64,000 nt of DNA from Podarcis tiliguerta (Eukaryota), in assembly GCA_965153285.1 (NCBI GenBank), contig OZ229113.1, one strand, 5' to 3'. The position numbers and the translations under genes are program-made. Below are positions 14,553 through 64,000 of this stretch, one piece after another; position 1 is the stretch's first letter, and the number at the start of each line of letters is the position of its first letter. The notes under the pieces were generated by a model. That model had not been told where the DNA came from and did not search any database. It saw only the letters and a program-made list of their open reading frames with translations.

Positions 14553-16612
14553 TATAGAGAGCTAAATTGACCAGTGATCTGTCTCAGTATAGGACAGCCT
14601 CCTAGGTTCCTAAATGTAAGCAGATTCAAAATAATTTTGGAGCATACATCTCATAAGAAGGGGGAAGGAATGACTGATGAAAAATAACTCAAAGAAAGAG
14701 GAGCTGCATTGATAAAGTGCGTTCTCCTTCATAGAGAGCACATGTTGCGGTGGGGGCTGACAAGACACCCCACTCTTGCTGGGCGGGTAAAATTGAGTTG
14801 GCCACTGTTGCGATTGGGCTCCTCTTGTTGTGGGGGAGATTTTAATGTTGCCATTTTCAGCTAGAAATGAGATCAAAGGTAACTTTTTGAGACTGTTAAA
14901 GTTCAAACTCAGCCAGCAACATTCTTGTATTTAAACAACTATTTGGAGAAAGGTACTTGGGCTTTGTGTAAAACAAAACAATATGTCAAAGAAAGAGAAA
15001 AAATTGTGCTGGTTTCTCGCTAGCTGACATCTTGTAACATCTTAGTAAACACCACACTTGCTAATCTGGGTTTTAATGTGCAGTCCACTGGATAAACCAT
15101 AGCCAATGAAAAGTATTACAGATATGGGATTGTAAGTGAAACAGATTATTCCAAGGTTCATGGATAAATAAGGTATAATAGGAGAGGAATGACAGGATTA
15201 GATTATACTAGAAACATAAAAGAAAATGCATGGAAATAATATTGTTGGTTTACATGAATGATATAATGTATTGAGAAAACAATATCCCCCCAAAATGTCA
15301 TAAGAATGCCATTGGCAAAACAATCAATTAGAGCAATTGGCATAAGAACCCTAGACTTGCATTTTGCCATCACAATTCTCCAGCCACCTAGTTTGAAAAG
15401 TTTCTGCGTTCCCTAATCCTTTTATACTGCCTTGTATTGTGGAATACCCTTACAATGCAGTAGGTCGAAGTAGCCTGCTGTCTCCAGAGATACAAACAAA
15501 CAAACAAACAAACAAACAAGAGGAGTGAATGTGCAGATAGTAATCAAGAATAGATCGATAGATCGATAGATAGACCAGCCAGGACCAGATGTCTTCATTA
15601 TCTGCATCATCTTTCATCCCTTGTGAAATTTTTGGAACTGGGCTCTGCAAGTAGGCAAAATGATATTTCCAACTTCCAAATGTGTGCTTAATCGGTTTAG
15701 TGGGAAATGTCACTGGTACCTGGCTCTTGGTTATTATCTTCATGCAAGTCACATGCTCACATTTCATACCAGCATCTTCTTCAAAACATACTATGTTATG
15801 ATTATGTGTCTTATCAGGTTGTCTGCTTTTTTCGTCTTTAGCATTGGTCCAGATTCCAGCCTCACGTTGAATTTTTTGCTGAAGCAAATCAGCAGCCAAA
15901 CAGCATCAGGATTTCTCCATTGGTATCAATTCATTGTAGCCCATCATGGATGGCTGTTGTGTTTGCTGAATGAGATAGTTCCTTGACTTAGCAGGAACAG
16001 GCTGGCAACACTCGCCTCTTTATGTTAAATTCTCTTATGCCTAAAGGACAACAGCCCAGTGTCATATTATTCAAGCCAATGTTAATTGTTTCCCAGTGTC
16101 CAGTTTTAAAGGGCAAGTAATTTAGATTTAGCAAATGAGAGCTCCCATGCTATTGTCTAAGCTAACGGTCATTTCATTTAAAAGTAAATTTTCTCATTGC
16201 TGGTCATTCAGAAACGCATCACACAATTTAATACCCTTTTTACACCACGATGGTTCAAGGGAGATAGTTAACACATTTTACCGAACAATTCACTCACTGA
16301 GGTAAACAGGGGTGGTTAAGATGGACTGTGAACTCCTAATTCAAAATTAATAAATAAAACTAAGCTGTTGCAGGGGAGACTGGGTCATTCTCTTTTACTT
16401 CTCTTTTAGCTTCTTTTACAGAGGTGAAACAAAGCTGCAATTTGCCTTAACAAAGACCCAGTTGTAATATCAAAATACATGTTTGGAAATATAGCATCAT
16501 CAGAAGCTATATGCATTCATTGCATGCCTCTTCTTAACAGTGACTCGTATGACCTTTAACCTGCAAAGCTTTTTTTTAAAAAACAACAACAACAACCTGT
16601 TCTTATTCAGTA

Positions 16613-21681: not shown

Positions 21682-21910
21682 AGACTCTCCTCTTTGAAAG
21701 AGAGGGGAGTGGTTGTGGGCGGGAGCCCGAGCTCCGCCCCTAGCAGGGGGCAACCGCCCCCTGCTTAATTAATTAGCTTACCTGGCTGGCGCGCCCCCGC
21801 CCACCAGCCGGCACCCAATCGGGTGCCGGTGGGGGGCGTGTCCAGCGTGCTTTAAAATAGAGCGCCAGCCCTCCTCCCGGCCTCTTTCTTCCTCGTCCCT
21901 CCGAGAGTCA
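21682..21910 (+). repeat. Split direct repeat A1 (229 bp)
   Basis: Identical by eye to A2 at 28891-29119. Confidence 0.95.
21716..21890 (+). promoter_or_regulatory. Putative Pol II promoter in repeat A
   Basis: GC boxes; CCAAT inside the palindrome ccggcacccaatcgggtgccgg; TATA-like TTTAAAA at 21851-21857; pyrimidine initiator CCTCTTTC about 30 nt later. TATA + CTCTTT spacing recurs in the solo relics. Confidence 0.6.
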
Positions 21911-23886
21911 GCTGGGGCATCCCGTTGCGTGTCGGAGTCAGGGAAGTATTTGCGGCTTGCTTCGCGTTCTATCTGTCGTTCTTTGTCTGTGTGGTGTGTG
22001 TGTGCCTGTCTGTTGTGTGTATCCTCGGGTTTAATTTACGTATTGTGAAGTCGGCAAGGTGCGCGTGTGGGTGCTTGTGCGATTGTAAGCTGCGCTTCGC
22101 GTTTTCGACCGTGCGTCTTCGCTCTCCCCCACGCCCCTTCGTGAGAGCGCTTTTGGGGATTTTGCGAGTTTGCGCTGTGTGTTGCTTGCGCGAGTGTGCG
22201 TCCTCGCCCCCCCCCCCTTTGCGTGAGCTCTTTTCGTTGGTTCCCTTTCTGAGTCCAGCCCCAAACTAAAATCATCTCGCCCCTAAATCTTGCGATCGCG
22301 CACAGCTGGGAATTAGAAAAAATTGCTTTTCGGCGTTCCCACGTGGTCACAGCCGCATTATCCGCCCCCCCCCCCTTTTCAATCTTTTCAGTCTGATTCC
22401 CCTGGGGGATCTCAGGGAAGGTATAGATCGGCGGTCTTACAACAAATCCACACCGGGACCGCGTGCAGGCGGCTACAAGTCCGTGGTGACTGCCCGGCTT
22501 GCTCATTTTATTTCCCTGTGCGTGTCTCGCCGCCCGCTGTAAGGCATACCTGGCTATCTACATATTTGAAGGGAATATTTAGCACCCTAGCTTCCCTTTG
22601 CGCTATCCGTTTGCCCTTCCAGCGCACCTTCCCACATTTTGCTTATTACTTGGTTCCTTCTTTCGCCTTCCCTTTTCCTACGATCAGAATTCCGCTTCAT
22701 TTTACTTCTCTGCTACTGGTAACTCTACCCTTAGTCACTTCACTCCCTGTTACGTTGGCTCCTATTTGCGTGGTTCCCCCTGCATTCTAGACCCACTTAA
22801 TCTACCCTTTATTGGGAATTTAAAATAGGCTGGCCTACTGGTCTATTTGATTCTAAAATAGCGCTGGCTTATCGTCTAATTGATTTCAAAATACTGCGGG
22901 TCTGGCAGTGATCTCTTAATAGTCAGAATATAGAAACTGCTGAGCCACCAACCCCCCCCCCCAAGCTCTATCGTGACTCATTGAAATAGTGCCGGTTAAG
23001 AACTACTCCCCCCCCCCCACTACAAGAGGCCCCTGCTGGCTCCCATCGTCTTTGTTTACCACGAACGACCCTTAATCGCCGTCATTGTTCAGGCTAGTGC
23101 TGAACCATTAGTCTGGCTGCCACAATAGTAGGGTGATCAGCAGCTTCCAGCCACCTATTGTCTGGGTCTCAATTGCTCTGCCGAGGCCAGCAGCCTATTG
23201 TTCGCGTCAATTTGCCCTGCATCGGTCATCTGTTGAGTTACAACTCTTTCAGAGGCGGTGATTCGCCGCCCCCTACTGGTGTTTTCTTGTGTGACACTTT
23301 TCAAGATAAACTTTTGCTGTCTTTAGTTGACCGCAGTAGGGCATTAAATTCAGGGAACCCAATAAGTTAATAGAACAAGTGAAGGAGGAAATTCATAGAT
23401 AGTAAACTTAATAGATACGACAATAGAAGCATTGTACAGGCACAGGTACAGATATATAATTATACGTTAATTCATTAGTAGTTAATCACAGATACACATA
23501 TATAATTATACGTCAATTTATTAGTAGTTAATACTGATAAATTTTAATTTTAACTTTTAATTTTAATTTTTAATTTTAATTTTAATTTTTAATTTTAATT
23601 TTAATTTTAATTTTTTTTTTTTTCCCCCTCCCACACCTACCTTTCTCTACACACCTACCTTCCTCAATTACTTTCTTGGATAGATACAAACTCATATATA
23701 TAGAAATAAATATAAATAAATAATACAAAATAAAACAAAATAAACAAAATAAATAAATAAAATAAAATTAAAATAAAATATATAAATAAATAATAAGAAA
23801 TAAGCAATCTAATAAATAAATAAATAAGTAATAAAGAAATATAAACAATCAAGCAGGCAATTGCAAAGGGTTCCCTAAGCCGTATC

Positions 23887-25356
23887 ATGGCCCCTAAGAG
23901 GAAGCGCGCACCTGAAGCACGCAAGACAGCCGCCAAACCATCCCGCGGGCCACAGGGTAAGAATAACAATCAAAAGCCGATCACTCATTTATTAAAAGCC
24001 TTTAGGTCCTTTCTTGACGATTACGAACAGCGCTTTCCCGAGGAAGACCCTAGCCCTCCCTCATCCCCCGACGCTATCCCGGATACTCAGGTGATACCAG
24101 AAAGCCCCCGGCCTTCTCAATTTGATGAAATCCCCGGTACCTCCGCGGCCCTCTTTGAAAGTTCACAGTTGGGTAGGGCGTCCACGAGCGGGCGGTCCGA
24201 ACCAGTGCGTACTAGATCACGATCTGGTGCAAACACATCTCGTGCTAAAGGGGATAAGGCAACTGCTAAATCTTCTGCTTCTAATAACACTGTTGCGCCC
24301 AGTTCTTCCAAGCGCACGCAGGACAAGCGGGTGCAGCCCCCGGAGTCATCGTCTTCGTCGGCGGAGGAAGGGGAGGAGCATGAGTCAGAGGAGTCCCCTG
24401 ACGTGCCGTCAGGAGAAAAACCATCCGGTAAGAGGCGTGAGAAGAAGAAGCATACCTGCAAGAGAAGCAAGTCAAGGAAGAGCGACTCGGATGAGACAGG
24501 TAGCTCTTCGTCAGACTATGATAGTGATGCGTCGCTGGGGTCATACTGGGGTCGAGGGGAGGAGATCTCGGGTCTCCCAGACTGGGCTCTGGATAGGAGG
24601 GCTTACAGCCACCGCAAAAAGTTTGGGGGGACCCAGGAGTGGAAGGACGGGGCCCTCGTTAAAGAGGCAACCGTATCGACCTACTCTACCTCGGATGTGA
24701 TTCCAGGGGACCACCTTTCTCCCAAGTTGCGCTCCAAAATTTTGAATGGCGAATTCGTAGACATGTTCAAGCTAGTTCCTCCAGCGGAGGAGCTGGGCCG
24801 GGGGGAGAAGAGGTCGTCCCATGGAAAACGGAAGAGCAGATTTCCGCCGGTTCCTAGGACGTTTGAGAATTGGTTGGACGGCTTTCAGGCCTTTATGGGA
24901 ACGATAGTGGCCGCGTATCCTAAGAGAGCAGTCCATTTGGTCGCCTATCTATCACACATCCGGACTGCCTATGCGCTCGCGGGTGAATTTGCTGCCATAG
25001 ATTACGATAAAAAGTTCCGGAGAAAAGCCTCTAGGATACCGTCGGCACGCTGGGACCAAATTGAGAACGGCATCTGGTCCGTAGCTGTGGGCCCGTATGT
25101 AGAGAAAAGGCAAGGGGACCCCTATCGTTTAGCCAGGGCGGAGCCTAGGAAGGACCTTAGGCGGAGAGTGTGTTGGGAGTACAACAAGGGGACCTGTCAA
25201 AGGGCTGCGTGTAAGTACTCTCATGAATGCGAGAGGTGTGCTGGGGCCCACCCGGTGGCGACATGCTTCAAAGGGAGTAAACAGCCCTTTCGAGGCGGCC
25301 GGGGGTTCCATCAAGGTAGTTCCAGGGGAGCCCCCGGAGCCGGGAACAGAAGGTGA
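23887..25356 (+). CDS. gag: Gag-like ORF1 (489 aa)
   Basis: Basic N-terminus (PKRKR), Ser/Glu-rich linker, core HLSPKLRSKILNGEFVDM...FENWLDGF, C-terminal CWEYNKGTCQRAACKYSHECERCAGAHPVATC zinc-finger motif. Confidence 0.9.
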   Translation: MAPKRKRAPEARKTAAKPSRGPQGKNNNQKPITHLLKAFRSFLDDYEQRFPEEDPSPPSSPDAIPDTQVIPESPRPSQFDEIPGTSAALFESSQLGRASTSGRSEPVRTRSRSGANTSRAKGDKATAKSSASNNTVAPSSSKRTQDKRVQPPESSSSSAEEGEEHESEESPDVPSGEKPSGKRREKKKHTCKRSKSRKSDSDETGSSSSDYDSDASLGSYWGRGEEISGLPDWALDRRAYSHRKKFGGTQEWKDGALVKEATVSTYSTSDVIPGDHLSPKLRSKILNGEFVDMFKLVPPAEELGRGEKRSSHGKRKSRFPPVPRTFENWLDGFQAFMGTIVAAYPKRAVHLVAYLSHIRTAYALAGEFAAIDYDKKFRRKASRIPSARWDQIENGIWSVAVGPYVEKRQGDPYRLARAEPRKDLRRRVCWEYNKGTCQRAACKYSHECERCAGAHPVATCFKGSKQPFRGGRGFHQGSSRGAPGAGNRR

Positions 25357-26965
25357 TCTAAACTTGCAGATGGCCACCACTCCTATCAGATTAGCCCCTC
25401 TCTGTGATTTGTTATCGCTTTACCCGGATAAACAGGCAGCATCGTACCTTAGGGAGGGTTTTTCTATTGGCTTTCGTATCCCAGTAGCAGGTCCGCTAAT
25501 AGCAAAGGAGTCCCCCAACCAAAAATCTGTCAGGGAGAGACCAGAAGTGGCCGAAAAGAAGATTGCCAAAGAAGTACGCGCGGGCAGGGTCGCGGGCCCC
25601 TTCGCCAGCCCCCCCTTCCCGAATTTGCACGTCTCACCTTTGGGCATAGTCCCTAAGAAAAATCCGGGGGAATTTCGGCTTATACATAACTTGTCCTATC
25701 CGGGGGGAGGCTCGGTAAATGATGCCATTCCCCCGGAGTTATGCTCGGTCAAGTACGCCACCTTCGACCATGCAGTTAAATTAATCAGGGGTTTTGGTCC
25801 GGAGGCCCTCCTGGCAAAGTGTGACATCGAGTCGGCCTTCCGCCTTTTGCCAGTGCATCCTGGGGATTTTTGGTTGTTGGGATTCAAATTTCAGGGTAGA
25901 TATTATGTGGACAAGGCTATGCCGATGGGCTGCTCCGTAGCTTGCTCGGCTTTCGAAACTTTTAGTACATTTTTGGATTGGGCCATAAGATTCAAGACAA
26001 ACGCTAGTGGGGTCACGCACTATTTAGACGACTTTCTTTTTGTGGGAAGGGCTGATTCCGGGGAATGCGTCTCACTGTTGGAAGCCTTTTCAGCCTTAGC
26101 AAAGGACCTGGGCGTTCCTTTAGCAGCAGAGAAAACAGAGGGCCCCGCAACCTGTCTCACTTACCTGGGGATCGAACTGGACACGATTGCCCAATCCTCC
26201 CGCTTGCCCAAGGAAAAAATCGACACCCTTAAGGAGTTAATTCAGGCCACCCTTCTGCTCAGGAAGATCACCCTCAGACAGATTCAGGCCCTGTTAGGCC
26301 ATTTCAACTTTGCCTGCAGGGTAGTCTCCCCGGGACGCCCCTTCTGTGCCCGCCTAGCCAGGCTTTCTGCGGGCCTAAAACACCCACACCATAGGGTTAG
26401 ACTGCCTAAGTCGGTCAAGGCAGATTTGGAGGTTTGGTTGAGTTTCTTAGCCAACTATAATGGAGTCTCGCTATGGCAGGATGTGCTTAACCTAACCTCG
26501 GACTTCCAGGTCCAATCGGACGCGGCTGGATCGCTAGGCTTTGGCGTGTACTTTAGGGGGCACTGGTGCGCCCAGCACTGGCCGGAGGGTTGGAAGGATG
26601 AGGGCATCACGCGGGATCTGACTTTTCTCGAGTTTTTTCCAATAGTAGTTGCGGTGCATATCTGGACGTCGCAATTTCAAAATCGTCGAGTGTGCTTCAA
26701 AACCGACAACCAGGCGGTGGTAAAAATTCTGGAAAGGCAGTCTTCCCGATCTTCAAGGGTGGCGGCCCTCCTGCGGTCATTTGTCCTACGGTGCCTTCGG
26801 TACAACATAATCTTTTCTGCCAAATTTGTACCAGGAGTCAATAATAATATTGCGGACGCCTTGTCTCGCTTTCAGATGTCCCGCTTCCGGTCGCTGGCAC
26901 CTGGAGCGCAACCGTTGCCCGAACACTTTCCGGAGCACCTGTGGAGCGTTGGAGACGCAAAGTGA
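25223..26965 (+). CDS. pol: Reverse transcriptase / RNase H (probable ATG at 25370)
   Basis: LGIVPKK-FRLIHNLS, KCDIESAF, MPMGC, YLDDFLF, YLGIELD; RNase H QSDAAGSLGFG, FLEFFPIV, TDNQAVV, NNIADALSR. No protease or DDE integrase. Confidence 0.96.
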   Translation: MNARGVLGPTRWRHASKGVNSPFEAAGGSIKVVPGEPPEPGTEGDLNLQMATTPIRLAPLCDLLSLYPDKQAASYLREGFSIGFRIPVAGPLIAKESPNQKSVRERPEVAEKKIAKEVRAGRVAGPFASPPFPNLHVSPLGIVPKKNPGEFRLIHNLSYPGGGSVNDAIPPELCSVKYATFDHAVKLIRGFGPEALLAKCDIESAFRLLPVHPGDFWLLGFKFQGRYYVDKAMPMGCSVACSAFETFSTFLDWAIRFKTNASGVTHYLDDFLFVGRADSGECVSLLEAFSALAKDLGVPLAAEKTEGPATCLTYLGIELDTIAQSSRLPKEKIDTLKELIQATLLLRKITLRQIQALLGHFNFACRVVSPGRPFCARLARLSAGLKHPHHRVRLPKSVKADLEVWLSFLANYNGVSLWQDVLNLTSDFQVQSDAAGSLGFGVYFRGHWCAQHWPEGWKDEGITRDLTFLEFFPIVVAVHIWTSQFQNRRVCFKTDNQAVVKILERQSSRSSRVAALLRSFVLRCLRYNIIFSAKFVPGVNNNIADALSRFQMSRFRSLAPGAQPLPEHFPEHLWSVGDAK

Positions 26966-27846
26966 TTCAGGGAGTATTGGCGTCCGTCGCACCCTCCACG
27001 CTTAGATCTTATAAGAAGGCTTGGTGCGATTTCCTGGCCTTCAGGTCCGGGTGTTCGGGAATTGCCCCTAGTGTGCCGCCGTCCACCGACGACGTCTTAA
27101 GTTATTTGTCACACTTGGATGACCTAGGGCGGGCTACTAAAACCTTGAAGATACACGTGGCCGCCATTAGTTTCTTCTCTAAGGCCACTTTCTCATCCGA
27201 CCCCTGCAGCGACTTCTTAGTCCGAAGGGCAATCGAGGGCTGGAGTAGGATGCAACCTCCGAGGGTCGGGGGTCGCAAGCCGATCTCCTACGGCCTACTG
27301 GCCAGGATCCGCACGGTATTGAGGTCCATCTGTTGGTCCAAGTACGAGGCCCGCATGTTTTCCGCCGCCTACGCAATAGCATTTTTTGGCGCCTTGCGTG
27401 TTGGCGAAGTAGTTGCCGAGGTTTGCGCAAATGGCTTGACGCGCGGACTCTTATTGGAGGACGTGCAGCTGGCCGAATCGTCCTTAACAGTCCGGATTCG
27501 CCAGTCTAAAACCGATCAGGCGGGGAGGGGGGCTTTTATCAAGCTAGTAGCATCAGGGGAGTCGGGTCCATGCCCAGTAAAGGACACCAGACGGTTCCTT
27601 TATCTCCGGCCTACCGGCCCGGGCCCGCTTTTGGTTCATAGGGACGGGTCTCCTTTGCTGAGACACCAATTCATGAGGATGCTCCGCAGGGCCATTGACG
27701 CTTGCGGGTTACCCTCCCAGGACTACGCAGCACACTCGTTTCGGATTGGTGCGGCAACAACGGCTGCTCGTCTTGGCCTGCCGGCTGATAGGATTAAGGA
27801 GATGGGTCGTTGGAAATCAGATGCATATAAGGCTTATATCCGTTAG
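26941..27846 (+). CDS. Tyrosine recombinase (true 5' end probably supplied by splicing)
   Basis: FFGALRVGE (R), SKTDQ (K), HSFRIGAAT (HxxR), GRWKSDAYKAY (W...Y): full catalytic set. Track start is GTG; the first ATG is about 100 codons in. Confidence 0.95.
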   Translation: MERWRRKVIQGVLASVAPSTLRSYKKAWCDFLAFRSGCSGIAPSVPPSTDDVLSYLSHLDDLGRATKTLKIHVAAISFFSKATFSSDPCSDFLVRRAIEGWSRMQPPRVGGRKPISYGLLARIRTVLRSICWSKYEARMFSAAYAIAFFGALRVGEVVAEVCANGLTRGLLLEDVQLAESSLTVRIRQSKTDQAGRGAFIKLVASGESGPCPVKDTRRFLYLRPTGPGPLLVHRDGSPLLRHQFMRMLRRAIDACGLPSQDYAAHSFRIGAATTAARLGLPADRIKEMGRWKSDAYKAYIR

Positions 27847-27917
27847 ACGGCGTTACCCCCATGACCCTTTACCCCCATGACCCGGCTCACCTTGGCTTCT
27901 CCTTCTTTCATCCGCAG

Positions 27918-28492
27918 CTTTTACCAGAAAGATCGTATGGATTTGCGGCCATAGTATCGTCCATTGGGCCCGTGCGAGGGCGTGTAGTTCCGGTCTCACT
28001 GCTAACCTCGGCCTATACCCTGGAGCACGTTGTTTCTGGTTCTCGAGAAGAGGCATGCGCTGGCAGGAACTTATGCCTTTATTGCGGGAGAAAGTGGCCT
28101 TGTTTGGCCCCCCCGACATCCTTATTATTCAACTGGGGGAGAATGACCTGGTTACCAGAGGAACTGCGGACTTATCATGGAGCATAAGAAATGATTTGGG
28201 CGAGATTGCTGCCTTGTGCCCCGAGACTACTGTGTTTTGGTCCTCCCTCCTAAAAAGAATTGTTTGGCGCGGGGCGCTGAGTTGTGTGGCTGTTGAGAAA
28301 ACCAGGAAGATGCTAAACCGGGCCGTGTCCCGTCGAGTCCGATACTTGAATGGCCAGGTTATCTCGCATGACCGTATCCGGGTGGGCAACAAAGCCCTGT
28401 ACCGGGATGATGGGGTCCATCTCTCTGACCATGGAAACGATTTGTGGCTTGAAAGTATTATCAGTAGTGTGAGGGATTGGTTGCAGCGGTGA
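27918..28492 (+). CDS. SGNH/GDSL hydrolase (esterase/lipase-like)
   Basis: Frame of ORF 28055-28492 is open upstream to 27881 and reads RKIVWICGHSIVHWA (block I Ser), RRGMRW (block II Gly), IQLGENDL (block III), RDDGVHLS (block V). Confidence 0.88.
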
Positions 28493-28525
28493 GGGTATTG
28501 GCGGCGAGCCTTCGGCTCGGGTGGC

Positions 28526-28890
28526 GGTTAGGCATTGGATTATTGCGTGATGGTGTGTGGGAAGGCTAGGTGTGGCCATCACCTAAGCCTTCAATTTTGG
28601 GTATTCCGTTAAAGGAATTCGGGGGTCGTGTATTCCGTCCGATGCCTGCTTGGCGGGAGGCCATGGCACGACCCCTGGTGGCATCAGGGGAGAGCCTATA
28701 GTTGTATTATCATCAACAGGCTCCGCCCCCTGATGATTCAACCCCTGTGGTGGACATCCAATGCCTAAGCCAATACCTTTTCACTGCTGTAACCAATAAA
28801 GTTGTGGCCTTTCTTTGCCCATAAACCATATATCTCGTGTCCTTGTCTATTCATTTCCACGGTACGGGGGTCGGGGTCCTCGCACCACAA
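28526..28890 (+). repeat. Split direct repeat B1 (365 bp) with AATAAA
   Basis: Matches B2 (29290-29654) with one visible mismatch (A28581/G29345). Confidence 0.95.
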
Positions 28891-29119
28891 AGACTCTCCT
28901 CTTTGAAAGAGAGGGGAGTGGTTGTGGGCGGGAGCCCGAGCTCCGCCCCTAGCAGGGGGCAACCGCCCCCTGCTTAATTAATTAGCTTACCTGGCTGGCG
29001 CGCCCCCGCCCACCAGCCGGCACCCAATCGGGTGCCGGTGGGGGGCGTGTCCAGCGTGCTTTAAAATAGAGCGCCAGCCCTCCTCCCGGCCTCTTTCTTC
29101 CTCGTCCCTCCGAGAGTCA
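28891..29119 (+). repeat. Split direct repeat A2
   Basis: Copy of 21682-21910 directly abutting B1. Confidence 0.95.
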
Positions 29120-29200
29120 CCCACCCGCCACTCCCTTTAGCTTAGGGTCTTGGCCTTGCTATGGACCTTAGGTTGGTCGCCCTGGTTAGTCGGGGGGCCT

Positions 29201-29250
29201 GGTAGGAGTTTTTCCACTTGGCAGTAGGCCAAGGGGTTTTTTCGCCTGCC
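29201..29250 (+). other. ENE-like RNA element (U-rich internal loop hairpin)
   Basis: GGUAGG-AG-UUUUU-CCACUUGGC-aguag-GCCAAGGGG-UUUUUU-CG-CCUGCC; covarying homologues at 42884-42922, 45848-45903 and 63286-63341(-). Confidence 0.7.
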
Positions 29251-29289
29251 TCGTAGCAATCGTCACAACTTTTGTGGTATTGGTGGGTA

Positions 29290-29654
29290 GGTTAGGCATT
29301 GGATTATTGCGTGATGGTGTGTGGGAAGGCTAGGTGTGGCCATCGCCTAAGCCTTCAATTTTGGGTATTCCGTTAAAGGAATTCGGGGGTCGTGTATTCC
29401 GTCCGATGCCTGCTTGGCGGGAGGCCATGGCACGACCCCTGGTGGCATCAGGGGAGAGCCTATAGTTGTATTATCATCAACAGGCTCCGCCCCCTGATGA
29501 TTCAACCCCTGTGGTGGACATCCAATGCCTAAGCCAATACCTTTTCACTGCTGTAACCAATAAAGTTGTGGCCTTTCTTTGCCCATAAACCATATATCTC
29601 GTGTCCTTGTCTATTCATTTCCACGGTACGGGGGTCGGGGTCCTCGCACCACAA
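29290..29654 (+). repeat. Split direct repeat B2
   Basis: Copy of B1; the element ends ...cgcaccacaa. Confidence 0.95.
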
Positions 29655-31053
29655 TTATGGTTTTGTAACTACTGAATGACCTGCTAAGTTTCTAGCTGCT
29701 GCTTTATACAACAAAGCAATCAATACCCAAAATTTACTAGAAGCATATAGAGCTTATGGGATAATAAGTACAACAACCATTATGCCAGGAAGAAAATGAA
29801 AGCTTGGGTTGGTATTGGAGAAAGAGAGTATAAGAAAGCCCTCAATCAATAAAATACAGTAGCAGTAAAGCAGGGATTCCTCTCTCTGAAAAGAAAACTT
29901 GTCAGAGGTTATACCGGTAATTTTCAGGCAAAACACCTGAAACAGAGCCACAGTGGACGTAGAGAATAACTAGACCTTGACACAAGCCATATGAGAATCA
30001 ACTTTGGATTCTGTCCCATGAAGATGCAATGTATGGATAAGGTAGCAATGGGAGAGGGGCATTTTTTCTCACTTGAGGAGCATCTAATGGAAATGGAGAT
30101 TTCCCATCAGTTCAGTATATCTTATGCTATTCAAATGAACACAGCTGTGTGGAACTATGAAATTGTAGCTTTCATGTGGCTCAATGAGGACACAACGTAG
30201 GCCTCAAGAATAAGTGGATTTGGAATATAGTAATAATACATGAGTGCACTTATTTGTGTGGCTGCATTCAGAAAGGGGGGGGGTATTGCTTTAGGTTTAG
30301 TGGTTATAATGTTAGTCCTGTTGTGTTATGGCTTTTTAATCACTATATTGCCATGCTAAATTTTAAATGGCTGGAAAGAACTGCATGCCAGGATACTATC
30401 CCAAATTCTGCTACATGAGCAATGGCGGTATGATCGCAAAAACTGCAGGGAAATGGCAACACAAAACTCTTGTAATTTTCCAAGCGAATGTGGTTGAAAA
30501 CTCTCCCCCCCGCCCCCCCCCCCGGAAACAATTAACATTGTGCTCAATTTCCACTAGATTTACAGAAGTGGCTTTTAAATCTTATGAAAGGTGTAAAATG
30601 CAAAGATTATCAGGTAAGGAAATGCCAGGAAGAAAGAACCAATTTCAAAAGAACACTACTGAACCTAACGCAGAACCACATAAATAGAGTGTACTTACAT
30701 TTACACCACAATCTAGTGTCTTCATGGGTGGGAGATGCACTGTACATTGGTATTCATGTTTTCATATTAATATTTCATATTCAGAAGCAAGTCCCACTGT
30801 GTTCAGTGTGGTATGTTTCCGAGTAAGTATGCATGTCTTGAGAATTTCAACAAAATCCACATTGAGGAGCTGTTTGATAACATGCTGACATCATTAGACT
30901 ATGTAATCTGGAACCAATAACTAGAAGCAAGAAAGAATTCAAAATAGCAAGCATGAGCAAAATAAATGATATCATGCCAACTTAATTTGCTAGGCTCATA
31001 TAGGTCACAGTTTTGGATTACAATTTTTATACTATTTCTATTTAAGAATACAC

Positions 31054-62827: not shown

Positions 62828-63632
62828 TTGCGTGTCGAGGTCCTCCAAGCCACCCCTAAATAATTCACACTTCACACATAATTTTTGTTTAAGGTTTTTG
62901 GCATAATTTTGGCCACAACTTTATTAAAATACATAAATGTGAGTGGTTGCTTAGGCATTGGTTATGACTATCTGTCTCCACGCCCAGGGACAGAACTGAC
63001 TTCTGGATTCCAGTGAAAGCCAGTGAGGGAAAACAATATTGGGGAGAGCATGGAGCCGGGAACCAGACCCTCATCCCCCCCTCATGCTCTCGGGGGCTTG
63101 CACAGCCCTAAGCCCCATTCAGGGGTACGGACGAAAGCATGGCGAGCCCCTGGATTCCTTTAATGGAGTTCCCTTGCAGCAGCAGCATTGGAGGGGCAGG
63201 CACCACCTGTCCTTACCCTTCCATCAACCAATTTTTTAAACCAATGCTTAAGCGCAACCTTACAAGTTGTGACAATTTGCTACACAGTAGGCAAAAGCGA
63301 AATGGCACCAGCCAATCAGCCAATTGGACAAAATTCCTACCAGGCCCCAAAAGCAGTCGACCCCATGACAGGCATAGCATGGTCAACGCAATAGCCCTAT
63401 ATTAGGGAGGGTGGGCGAGTGATCCGATGCATGCAGCAAAAGAGCCCAGTCAGTGCTGTGTGACTTGATTTTATAAACTTTGGTCCGTCCTCCTAAATGG
63501 CAACGCCAAAATTTGCCCAGCAACCGAACCGCCCAATCACTGTGGATGGTCATCCAAACAAACCCGCCCAGCAACAGAGGAGTGGCCTGCCAGACCCCAC
63601 CACAACACGTGCTCTCCATGAAAGAGAACATG
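62828..63632 (-). mobile_element. Ngaro-type solo A-spacer-B relic (closest to 45543-46328)
   Basis: Minus strand: tttataaaa...ctcttttg, cgcccaccctccct, ttgaccatgctatg, ENE-like hairpin, gtagcaaattgtcacaactt, tccattaaaggaatcc, ccaatgcctaagc, aataaagttgtggcc, ends gacacgcaa. Confidence 0.88.
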
Positions 63633-64000
63633 CTTTGTCCTGATTGCCCTTTGGTTTGAACTCCTGGTTCCTGACTCACTGGACTGCTTCCTACAGCCCA
63701 GCCCTGAGAGAGGGACCGAAAAGGGTTGACATTCCCCAGTGAGGATTGAGTTTCAAGCCTAGAACATAGTCCAGAATTTTTGCCATGGAACCCCGGTGCC
63801 CCACAGATTATCTCCCACTTTTAGTTTGGGGACTACTGGGAAGACCTACTGGGCGGCAGTAATGCCTTGTGTGAGCTAAAAAATAGTCCCCCAAACCCCC
63901 TGTACCTGTTCACTGCAGGGGAAGATTAGCTTTACATCAAAACCTCTCCACTGTTATGGATTTCCTCCATGAAAATCTGCTGACGAGCTTCCCAGAAACC

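What the first reader, a model, noticed from the sequence alone, without database searches (positions are those of the whole stretch)
29201..29250. ENE-like poly(A) triple-helix element placed only in the A2-B2 spacer
Seen: stem GGUAGG/CCUGCC, U5 and U6 tracts facing across an internal loop, upper stem CUUGGC/GCCAAG. Diverged relics keep the architecture with changed pairs: GGAAAGG-AA-UUUU-CCUGC-auug-GCAGG-UUUU-G-CCUUUCC (42884-42922), GGCAGG-AA-UUUUU-CCCA...UGGG-UUUU-G-CCUGCU (45848-45903), GGUAGG-AA-UUUU...UUUU-G-CCUACU (63286-63341, minus). Known: this is the layout of the KSHV PAN and MALAT1 ENEs, which clamp poly(A) in U-A.U triples and block decay; ENEs are reported in plant and fungal transposons. 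Inference: B1 and B2 both carry AATAAA but only RNA reading through to B2 contains the ENE, so it would selectively stabilise the replication-competent full-length RNA. I know of no description in vertebrate YR retrotransposons.
Basis: partly seen in the sequence, partly recalled or inferred. Interest (0 to 1): 0.9.

Follow-up and report, generated by a model that had tools for sequence, protein, structure and literature searches.

The report
Poly(A)-clamp-like hairpin in lizard retrotransposon
A young tyrosine-recombinase (Ngaro-type) retrotransposon in a lizard genome carries, in a unique spacer near its 3' end, a conserved RNA hairpin whose two facing U tracts look like the known "ENE" elements that grip a poly(A) tail, and a second conserved helix would fold the tail back next to it. 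No RNA or binding data could be obtained to prove this.

Summary
At 29201-29250 (+) there is a hairpin with a 6-bp lower stem, U5 facing U6 across an internal loop, and an upper stem-loop. It lies in a 170-nt unique spacer (29120-29289) between repeats A2 and B2 of a young Ngaro-type retrotransposon that encodes RT, a tyrosine recombinase and a GDSL hydrolase.

Three diverged copies (42884-42922, 45847-45904, 63285-63342 minus) keep the architecture. They have compensatory changes in the lower stem and, in one copy, a rebuilt upper stem. A strict descriptor finds 3 hits in the window against 0.07-0.1 expected by chance.

Two things are new here:
- The hairpin is one arm of a junction closed by a conserved helix.
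- The conserved box just 3' of it starts a long-range duplex with the poly(A)-signal region of B (z -3.7 to -5.5 in all four copies). This duplex would put the poly(A) tail beside the U loop.

An ENE-like poly(A) clamp is my best reading (about 0.55). A packaging or RT-initiation signal is the main rival.

There is no RNA evidence and no Rfam match. The motif is absent from 80 distant recombinase-retroelement loci. Other first-stage notes flagged the same motif on other pieces of this genome. I class it as a new member of a known kind.

The parts
21682..21910 (+). Repeat A1 (5' terminal repeat, promoter-like; same TATA-like motif as in A2)
   Evidence: 100% identical over 229 nt to 28891-29119; sequence
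23887..28492 (+). Coding region. ORF1 23887-25356, RT 25223-26965, tyrosine recombinase 26941-27846, GDSL/SGNH hydrolase 27861-28187 plus 28055-28492 (two frames)
   Evidence: ORF list. Pfam RVT_1 3.7e-11, Phage_integrase and SAM-like (both below Pfam's cutoff), Lipase_GDSL_2 3.7e-6. The recombinase is 80% identical to Podarcis muralis proteins
28526..28890 (+). Repeat B1 with AATAAA at 28795-28800
   Evidence: 99.7% identical over 365 nt to B2; sequence
28891..29119 (+). Repeat A2. It has a palindromic start and TTTAAAATAG at 29060-29069, about 50 nt before the end of A
29120..29289 (+). Unique spacer between A2 and B2 that holds the structured RNA domain
   Evidence: No copy after A1. Homologous spacers are in the three diverged copies
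29152..29264 (+). Junction domain. An outer helix GGC/GUC and helix P0 (UUGCUAUG 29156-29163 with CGUAGCAA 29252-29259) enclose small hairpins and the U-loop hairpin
   Evidence: The window copy and copy 45797-45918 give the same MFE architecture independently, with z -2.27 and -3.09. A covariance model built from 3 copies finds the 4th at E 1.9e-4. 95.7% of cells are paired, against 27-61% with slid partners
29201..29250 (+). ENE-like hairpin: lower stem, U5 (29209-13) facing U6 (29237-42), upper stem-loop
   Evidence: Family copies in the laid contigs show no variant of >=10% in either U tract, and 29248 G>A (98% of depth) makes the lower stem fully Watson-Crick
29262..29303 (+). 5' arm of the long-range duplex: invariant box GUCACAACUUU 29262-29272, GGUAUUGG 29276-29283, and the first 14 nt of B2
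29520..29573 (+). 3' arm of the long-range duplex inside B2. It ends with the last AAA of AAUAAA (29559-29564) plus GUUGUGGCC. Likely cleavage is at CA 29585 or 29592
   Evidence: Duplex -46.2 kcal/mol, z -5.3 against shuffles. AATAAAGTTGTGGCC is almost invariant in the 4 copies, with one G>T in c3
42846..42936 (+). Diverged copy c2 of the domain (hairpin 42884-42922: 7-bp lower stem, U4/U4, a rebuilt 5-bp upper stem). Box at 42934, AAUAAA at 43284
45797..45918 (+). Diverged copy c3 (hairpin 45847-45904, U5/U4). It is a solo A-spacer-B unit with its own TATA-like motif near 45706. Box at 45916, AAUAAA at 46232
63271..63388 (-). Diverged copy c4 (hairpin 63285-63342, U4/U4, weak upper stem). 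It is a solo A-spacer-B unit with TATAAAA near 63478. Box at 63273, AAUAAA at 62925

Best explanation
The hairpin is an ENE-like element in the 3' untranslated part of the read-through (genomic) RNA of a lacertid-lizard Ngaro retrotransposon. Transcription would start in A1, pass the poly(A) signal in B1, copy A2 and the spacer, and end at the poly(A) site in B2.

In that RNA, the spacer tail and the first nucleotides of B2 pair with the B2 segment that ends in the poly(A) signal. This loops out about 200 nt. The poly(A) tail then emerges 12-19 nt from the same helix end where the junction domain sits, 11 nt away on the other strand.

The tail can then enter the U-rich internal loop from below and form U-A.U triples, with one U tract pairing Watson-Crick and the other Hoogsteen. 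This would slow deadenylation and decay. RNAs that end in B1 lack the element.

Shown: the anatomy, its conservation with compensatory change, and the long-range complementarity.
Inferred: transcription, polyadenylation, triplex formation and stabilisation.
For: - Architecture read directly from the sequence. It is the MFE or near-MFE fold in isolation and within the domain.
- Three strict descriptor hits against 0.07-0.1 expected, all on the sense strand at homologous places.
- Lower stem 96% paired; 3 of 7 pairs changed on both sides; covariation 0.595 against 0.294 in shuffles, reached by 6 of 500.
- G.U pairs in the lower stem and in P0 fit sense-strand RNA only.
- Copy c2 closes the U loop with a different 5-bp stem built from other nucleotides.
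- No variant of >=10% in either U tract among many family contigs. The window copy's two odd positions are normal in most copies: 29248 G>A restores U-A, and 29208 G>A gives AA as in the relics.
- A subfamily seen in related species replaces CAAGG with UUUUU. This makes a second U-rich loop while the ENE-type fold remains the MFE.
- Long-range duplex of -32 to -46 kcal/mol in all four copies, z -3.7 to -5.5, with compensatory differences: GGCAUUGGAU/AUCCAAUGCC in c1 against GGCUCUGGUUCA/UGAACCAGAGCC in c3, and GGUAUUGG/CCAAUACC against GGUUGC/GCAACC.
- AAUAAA is conserved in all four copies.
- A review defines the class as a stem-loop with a U-rich internal loop next to G-C pairs. About 10 predicted elements were tested and confirmed in reporters (PMC7583470).
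- A retrotransposon ENE has been shown to act this way in Arabidopsis Evade (PMC12501189).
Against: - No RNA-level evidence. The runs found were contigs of uncertain kind and showed no poly(A) ends.
- The U tracts are separated from the lower G-C stem by AA/G (AG/CG in this copy). The G-C pairs for A-minor contacts are therefore not directly adjacent on the lower side.
- The relics have only U4/U4.
- No Rfam family matches, even at E<=10.
- Neither the descriptor nor the covariance model finds anything in 80 distant recombinase-retroelement loci, so this is not a general Ngaro/DIRS feature.
- The hairpin alone is not unusually stable (z -1.28).
- The long-range helix covers half of AAUAAA and could instead regulate polyadenylation.
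- Only four independent sequences were available, so covariation statistics are weak.
Confidence: 0.55

Rival explanations
1. The junction domain, including the U-loop hairpin, is a recognition signal for the element's own proteins. It could be a packaging signal bound by the ORF1 (Gag-like) protein, or the site where the reverse transcriptase assembles near the RNA 3' end. It marks only the read-through RNA as the replication template. The U tracts would be protein contacts, not a poly(A) clamp.
For: - The same 'present only in full-length RNA' logic applies.
- The hairpin is embedded in a larger conserved multi-helix domain.
- The string UUGGC in the upper hairpin is invariant in all four copies even where its pairing role differs, which suggests sequence-specific recognition.
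- The long-range helix ties the domain to the 3' end, where cDNA synthesis must start.
- The primer and initiation site of DIRS-type elements are unknown (PMC7192593).
Against: - It does not explain why two U tracts face each other between G-C-closed stems, which is the specific ENE layout.
- It does not explain why a subfamily gained a second U-rich loop.
- No protein-binding data exist.
Confidence: 0.22
2. The spacer mainly regulates poly(A)-site choice. The box GUCACAACUUU and the sequence after it pair with AAAGUUGUGGC at the poly(A) signal of B1 (masking it and favouring read-through) or of B2. The U-loop hairpin would be an accessory or unrelated structure.
For: - The duplex includes the last three A of AAUAAA and the invariant GUUGUGGCC.
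- The unique spacer tail pairs equally well with B1 and B2, at -29.8 kcal/mol.
- The B poly(A) region is the best or near-best partner of the box in 3 of 4 copies.
Against: - The box is transcribed about 450 nt after the B1 signal, so masking would have to outrun cleavage.
- This gives no role to the conserved U tracts or the covarying lower stem.
- It is not exclusive with the ENE reading.
Confidence: 0.13
3. The resemblance is fortuitous. The hairpin is inherited sequence of no function, kept in the relics only by shared ancestry.
For: - Only four sequences are available and three are dead relics.
- Related sequences can exceed the shuffle controls without any structure (tool caveat).
- The hairpin's own z-score is weak.
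Against: - The copies are only about 68-70% identical overall, yet they keep both U tracts, the lower stem with double changes, and a rebuilt upper stem in c2.
- The descriptor expectation is 0.07-0.1 per window.
- The U tracts are invariant across many family contigs.
Confidence: 0.1

Closest known systems
KSHV PAN RNA ENE (single-domain element for nuclear expression)
   Same: A stem-loop with two facing U tracts of about 5 nt between a G-C-rich lower stem and an upper stem-loop, on a polyadenylated RNA. There are extra nucleotides at the base of the U loop, and PAN has an AU bulge there (PMC13541005).
   Different: - Here the extra nucleotides are AA on the 5' strand and G (or CG) on the 3' strand, so the lower G-C pairs are offset from the U tracts on both strands.
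- The hairpin is one arm of a junction closed by a further helix.
- It lies about 335 nt from the poly(A) site, bridged by a long-range duplex.
- It is in a retrotransposon, not a viral lncRNA.
- There is no Rfam match and no shared sequence.
ENEs and double ENEs of plant and fungal transposable elements (TWIFB1; Arabidopsis Evade/Copia93)
   Same: - A retroelement RNA with a U-rich internal-loop hairpin in a spacer between coding region and terminal repeat. Evade's ENE also sits in an unusually long spacer before the 3' LTR and protects against deadenylation (PMC12501189).
- A subfamily here has two U-rich loops separated by a 3-bp helix, which recalls double ENEs.
   Different: - The host is a vertebrate, and the element is a tyrosine-recombinase (Ngaro) retrotransposon with split direct repeats, not an LTR or hAT element.
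- The pocket motif and adenosine triad of double ENEs were not examined.
- No function has been tested.
MALAT1 / MEN-beta triple helix and the MALAT1-like 'TripHelMasc' copies reported in anole lizards and fish (Zhang 2017, cited in PMC10869381)
   Same: U-rich internal-loop hairpin near an RNA 3' end in a lizard genome.
   Different: - There is no genomically encoded A-rich tract after the hairpin.
- There is no tRNA-like mascRNA (ARAGORN finds none; no Rfam mascRNA hit).
- No C/G interruptions in the U tracts of the window copy.
- The predicted partner is a normal poly(A) tail.
Ngaro retrotransposons (A1-[ORFs]-B1A2B2)
   Same: RT, tyrosine recombinase, split direct repeats, no target-site duplication, and the hydrolase ORF seen in vertebrate members (PMC8547959; PMC7192593).
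   Different: A 170-nt unique, structured spacer separates A2 from B2, whereas the textbook outline writes B1A2B2 as contiguous. I found no description of RNA structure in that spacer.

Membership tests
ENE (triple-helix poly(A)-binding stability element) | Stem-loop with a U-rich internal loop: two U tracts facing each other | tested here: met
   U5/U6 in the window copy; U4/U4, U5/U4 and U4/U4 in the diverged copies. No variant of >=10% in either tract among family contigs.
ENE (triple-helix poly(A)-binding stability element) | G-C base pairs adjacent to the U-rich loop (A-minor platform) | tested here: inconclusive
   On the upper side, C-G and C-G pairs sit directly next to the loop in c1-c3. 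On the lower side, the G-C pairs are two in a row but are separated from the U tracts by AA/G (AG/CG in the window copy).
ENE (triple-helix poly(A)-binding stability element) | Resides in an RNA that ends in a poly(A) tail or A-rich tract within reach of the loop | tested here: inconclusive
   A conserved AAUAAA lies 297-350 nt downstream in all four copies. A conserved long-range duplex would bring the tail to within about 12-19 nt of the domain. No reads show a poly(A) end.
ENE (triple-helix poly(A)-binding stability element) | Binds oligo(A) as U-A.U triples and raises RNA abundance in a U-dependent way | not testable with these tools
   Needs melting or gel-shift assays and reporter assays.
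ENE (triple-helix poly(A)-binding stability element) | Structure supported by covariation | tested here: met
   Lower stem: 3 of 7 pairs with double changes and 96% paired. Whole domain: 95.7% paired against 27-61% with slid partners. Power is low because there are only 4 sequences.
Curated Rfam RNA families (any ENE or triple-helix model the library holds) | Score against a covariance model | tested here: not met
   No relevant hit at gathering threshold in the window, or at E<=10 in 28800-29700. I could not check which ENE models Rfam 15 contains.
MALAT1-like triple helix | Downstream genomic A-rich tract plus a tRNA-like structure processed by RNase P | tested here: not met
   There is no A-rich tract after the hairpin, no tRNA-like gene and no mascRNA hit.
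Ngaro (tyrosine-recombinase retrotransposon) | RT plus tyrosine recombinase, with split direct repeats A1...B1 A2 B2 | tested here: met
   Pfam RVT_1; Phage_integrase and SAM-like hits (both below Pfam's cutoff) backed by strong homologues named integrase/recombinase XerD homolog in lizards. A1=A2 at 100% and B1=B2 at 99.7%.

The most novel reading that the evidence does not exclude
The A-spacer-B module is a self-contained unit, both at the 3' end of each full element and in each solo unit such as 45.5-46.3 kb and 62.9-63.7 kb. Its parts are a promoter in A, an ENE-bearing junction domain, a long-range tether to the poly(A) signal, and the poly(A) site in B.

It would do two things. First, it would give the read-through genomic RNA a stability advantage over B1-terminated mRNA, which amounts to quality control of poly(A)-site choice by RNA decay. 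Second, it would let A2 and the solo units produce an abundant PAN-like polyadenylated non-coding RNA of about 0.5 kb.

This would be the first triple-helix stability element described in a vertebrate tyrosine-recombinase retrotransposon. It would also be the first ENE I know of that reaches its tail through a conserved long-range helix rather than by being close to it.
Probability: 0.25. Interest if true: 0.75.

Novelty: new member of a known kind. Interest (0 to 1): 0.58.

Why it matters
If the hairpin clamps poly(A), triple-helix RNA stabilisation extends to vertebrate tyrosine-recombinase retrotransposons. The papers I could search document it in herpesvirus lncRNAs, MALAT1/NEAT1, dicistroviruses and mostly plant and fungal transposons.

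It would also give a concrete, testable answer to how a split-repeat element favours its replication-competent read-through RNA over RNA that stops at the first poly(A) signal.

The long-range tether is a new design feature. It suggests that searches restricted to the last 100-200 nt of transcripts may miss ENEs.

The 3' module is short (about 460 nt, from 29120 to 29585), so reporter and binding tests are easy. If the rival reading is right, the domain would instead be a candidate packaging or initiation signal for a class of elements whose priming mechanism is still unknown.

Tried and rejected
- Rfam, whole window at gathering threshold and the region at E<=10: nothing relevant.
The planned cross-species covariation set therefore could not be built.
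- Viral contigs searched by protein: no relative found.
- Metagenome contigs: 80 loci with recombinases 27-42% identical. They gave no strict descriptor hit. A relaxed descriptor gave 3 sense and 2 antisense hits, none in a 3' position. The covariance model gave no hit. Only roughly 30 of these loci extend more than 1 kb past the recombinase gene.
- Exact-pattern scans for the conserved box: none in viral contigs. Two hits in bacterial MAGs have no hairpin upstream and are chance matches.
- Sequencing runs: no run is on record as RNA. All four laid runs were contigs, so they cannot show expression, starts, ends or tails.
- tRNA-like or MALAT1-type reading: rejected.
- Primer-binding-site reading of the spacer tail: the TGGTAT start in the window copy is not conserved in the other copies. 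Rejected.
- RNAalifold on the MAFFT alignment missed the lower stem because one copy was shifted by a column. I fixed this by aligning from the stem ends and by fitting to a model.
- Tycowski 2012 and 2016 and Zhang 2017 are not held in the library.

Full report
**What is there**

The region 21682-29654 (+) is one young retrotransposon.
- BLAST of its 3' end against the window shows A1 21682-21910 = A2 28891-29119 (229 nt, 100%) and B1 28526-28890 = B2 29290-29654 (365 nt, 99.7%).
- Between the repeats lie ORF1, an RVT_1 reverse transcriptase, a phage-integrase-type tyrosine recombinase and a GDSL hydrolase.
- The best homologues of the recombinase are lacertid-lizard proteins: Podarcis muralis 80%, then Lacerta, Zootoca and geckos.
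- This is the Ngaro outline A1-[ORFs]-B1A2B2 (PMC8547959), with one difference. A 170-nt unique spacer, 29120-29289, separates A2 from B2, and the sequence after A1 is unrelated to it.
- A carries a TATA-like motif about 50 nt before its end (29060-29069).
- B carries AATAAA (28795-28800 and 29559-29564), followed by CA dinucleotides 21 and 28 nt later and a U/GU-rich stretch.

**The observation**

The hairpin reads exactly as reported:
- lower stem GGUAGG with CCUGCC (29201-06 / 29245-50)
- AG
- U5
- CC with GG, an A.G mismatch, then CUUGGC with GCCAAG
- a 5-nt loop
- U6
- CG

In the isolated 62-nt stretch the ENE-type fold is within 0.3 kcal/mol of the MFE. In the 117-nt domain it is part of the MFE. 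The hairpin alone is not unusually stable (z -1.28), which is expected for a stem with a large internal loop.

I wrote a descriptor that requires two U>=4 tracts, a closing upper stem, and a lower stem of >=5 bp with >=3 G-C pairs at an offset of 0-2 nt.
- It finds 3 hits in the whole window on both strands: the reported site, 42884-42922 and 45847-45904.
- Dinucleotide shuffles give 0.07-0.10.
- The fourth copy (63285-63342, minus) appears with relaxed settings.

**Homology and conservation**

- The four copies share the downstream box, which occurs nowhere else in the window, and B-like tails.
- They are only about 68-70% identical to each other.
- No coding sequence accompanies the three diverged copies.
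- Copies c3 and c4 have an A-like part upstream, with a palindromic start and a TATA-like motif. They are solo A-spacer-B units, the counterpart of the isolated AB repeats described for Ngaro.
- Aligned from the stem ends, the lower stem is 96% paired. Three of seven pairs changed on both sides (U.G, U-A, C-G and A-U at one position). Covariation is 0.595 against 0.294 in shuffles (reached by 6 of 500), and slid controls pair at 35-68%.
- Several pairs are G.U, which fits RNA of the sense strand only.
- In c2 the long upper hairpin is gone, and a different 5-bp stem (CCUGC/GCAGG) closes the U loop.

Contigs of a run that holds the family at high depth, and of runs from two other coded organisms, add three points:
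- Neither U tract shows a variant at >=10%.
- 29248 G>A (98% of depth) makes the lower stem perfect, and 29208 G>A (84%) gives the AA seen in the relics.
- Most variation falls in the upper hairpin.

One common subfamily replaces CAAGG with UUUUU. That creates a second U-rich loop above a 3-bp helix, and the ENE-type fold is still its MFE.

**New findings around the hairpin**

First, the hairpin is one arm of a junction.
- UUGCUAUG (29156-63) pairs with CGUAGCAA (29252-59).
- GGC (29152-54) pairs with GUC (29262-64).
- The window copy and c3 fold into the same architecture independently, with z -2.27 and -3.09.
- A covariance model built from three copies recovers the fourth at E 1.9e-4 and nothing else credible.
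- On the fitted alignment 95.7% of cells pair, against 27-61% when partners are slid.

Second, a long-range duplex starts directly after the junction.
- The invariant box GUCACAACUUU (29262-72) is complementary to AAAGUUGUGGC (29562-72). That stretch is the last three A of the poly(A) signal plus the invariant sequence behind it.
- The pairing continues. GGUAUUGG (29276-83) pairs with CCAAUACC (29534-41), and the first 14 nt of B2 pair with 29520-35.
- The duplex energies are -46.2, -37.1, -44.0 and -32.5 kcal/mol in the four copies. The z-scores are -5.3, -3.7, -5.5 and -5.0 against shuffled partners.
- In all four copies it beats every other natural window nearby.
- The arms differ between copies in a compensatory way: GGCAUUGGAU/AUCCAAUGCC in c1 against GGCUCUGGUUCA/UGAACCAGAGCC in c3, and GGUAUUGG/CCAAUACC against GGUUGC/GCAACC.

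**How it most likely works**

- The RNA that can regenerate the element must start in A1 and read through B1 into B2, because only that RNA carries a complete B-A junction. This follows from the repeat structure and the accepted models for split-repeat elements. Only that RNA contains the spacer.
- In it, the long-range duplex loops out about 200 nt of B2. The junction domain lies 11 nt 5' of one strand of the duplex. The cleavage site lies 12-19 nt 3' of the other strand, at the same end of the helix.
- A poly(A) tail would therefore emerge at the foot of the domain. It could run upward into the U loop with its 5' end at the lower stem. As I recall the PAN ENE-oligo(A) structure, that is the same polarity (my recollection, not tested here).
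- U-A.U triples would then hinder deadenylases, as shown for PAN and for the Evade retrotransposon.

All steps after the anatomy are inference. My confidence in the poly(A)-clamp reading is about 0.55. My confidence that it specifically favours B2-terminated over B1-terminated RNA is lower, about 0.35-0.4.

**Rivals**

- A packaging or RT-initiation signal fits the 'only in genomic RNA' logic, the larger domain, the invariant UUGGC string and the tether to the 3' end. The primer of DIRS-type elements is unknown. However, it does not predict two facing U tracts or the gain of a second U loop.
- A poly(A)-site regulator fits the masking of half of AAUAAA, and the unique spacer tail pairs equally with B1 and B2. 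However, it gives the U loop no role. It is compatible with the ENE reading.
- Pure chance or inheritance is unlikely given the counts above, but it cannot be excluded statistically with four sequences.

**Comparison with what is known**

- The class definition in a review is a stem-loop with a U-rich internal loop next to G-C pairs (PMC7583470). This is met on the upper side. On the lower side the G-C pairs are offset by AA/G. Bulges at the base of the loop are common in ENEs, for example the AU bulge in PAN (PMC13541005).
- It is not MALAT1-like. It has no A-rich tract, no tRNA-like element and no Rfam hit.
- MALAT1-like modules have been reported as multiple copies in anole lizards, but they are a different thing.
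- ENEs in transposable elements are known mainly from plants and fungi. One review also mentions slime mold and stickleback 'retroviruses'.
- I found no paper linking ENEs with Ngaro or DIRS elements. The key survey (Tycowski 2016) was not readable here, so prior mention cannot be ruled out.
- Neither the descriptor nor the model finds the element in 80 distant recombinase-retroelement loci from metagenomes. It therefore looks lineage-restricted.

**Limits**

No lizard, gecko or amphibian loci could be fetched, so the comparative set is four copies plus variant tables from contigs.
- No run on record as RNA holds the sequence, and contigs cannot show ends or tails.
- At least five first-stage notes on other pieces of this genome flagged ENE-like U-loop hairpins in lizard mobile elements. 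Only their titles were visible. They are the same kind of unaided reading and are not independent support.

**Verdict**

The feature is real and conserved. It is best read as an ENE-like poly(A) clamp with a long-range tether, in a lizard Ngaro retrotransposon. I class it as a new member of a known kind, with interest 0.58.

Noticed in passing
window 29262-29303 with 29520-29573; also c2 42934/43284, c3 45916/46232, c4 63273/62925: A conserved long-range RNA duplex joins the spacer tail (plus the start of B) to the stretch that ends in the poly(A) signal. It half-covers AAUAAA. It could regulate polyadenylation independently of any ENE role.
   Followed up: yes
window 45540-46300 (+) and 62850-63650 (-): The two 'relics' are solo A-spacer-B units. 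Each has its own palindromic A start, a TATA-like motif, the structured spacer and a poly(A) signal. Each could therefore be a small stand-alone transcription unit of about 0.5 kb.
   Followed up: partly
window 28893-28920 (start of A2; same at 21684-21711); similar at about 45548-45565 and about 63610-63630 (-): There is a near-palindrome (CTCTTT-G-AAAGAG core) right at the B1|A2 junction, which is the element's end-to-end joint. It is a candidate core site for the tyrosine recombinase.
   Followed up: no
read-derived variant of 29217-29234 (runs X1, X2 and some X7 contigs): A common subfamily, also present in two other coded organisms, has CAAGG replaced by UUUUU. This gives two U-rich loops separated by a 3-bp CCA/UGG helix, which resembles a double ENE.
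   Followed up: partly
window 23440-23860: An AT-rich microsatellite block (TTAATTTT-type and AAATAAAT-type repeats forming inverted repeats) lies inside the roughly 2-kb leader between A1 and ORF1. It is probably a secondary expansion or insertion.
   Followed up: no
window 27861-28492: The hydrolase region is read in two overlapping frames (27861-28187 and 28055-28492). This is either a frameshift in this copy or a programmed arrangement. Only the second part hits Lipase_GDSL_2.
   Followed up: no
window 37910-38064 (-): A fragment matches the 3' end of eukaryotic SSU rRNA (Rfam RF01960, 79.7 bits, model positions 1667-1823). It is an isolated rDNA-derived piece.
   Followed up: no
window 63495-63629 (-) and 14721-14856: A 137-nt stretch just upstream of copy c4 is 74% identical to a stretch at 14.7-14.9 kb on the other strand. 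This is another dispersed repeat.
   Followed up: no
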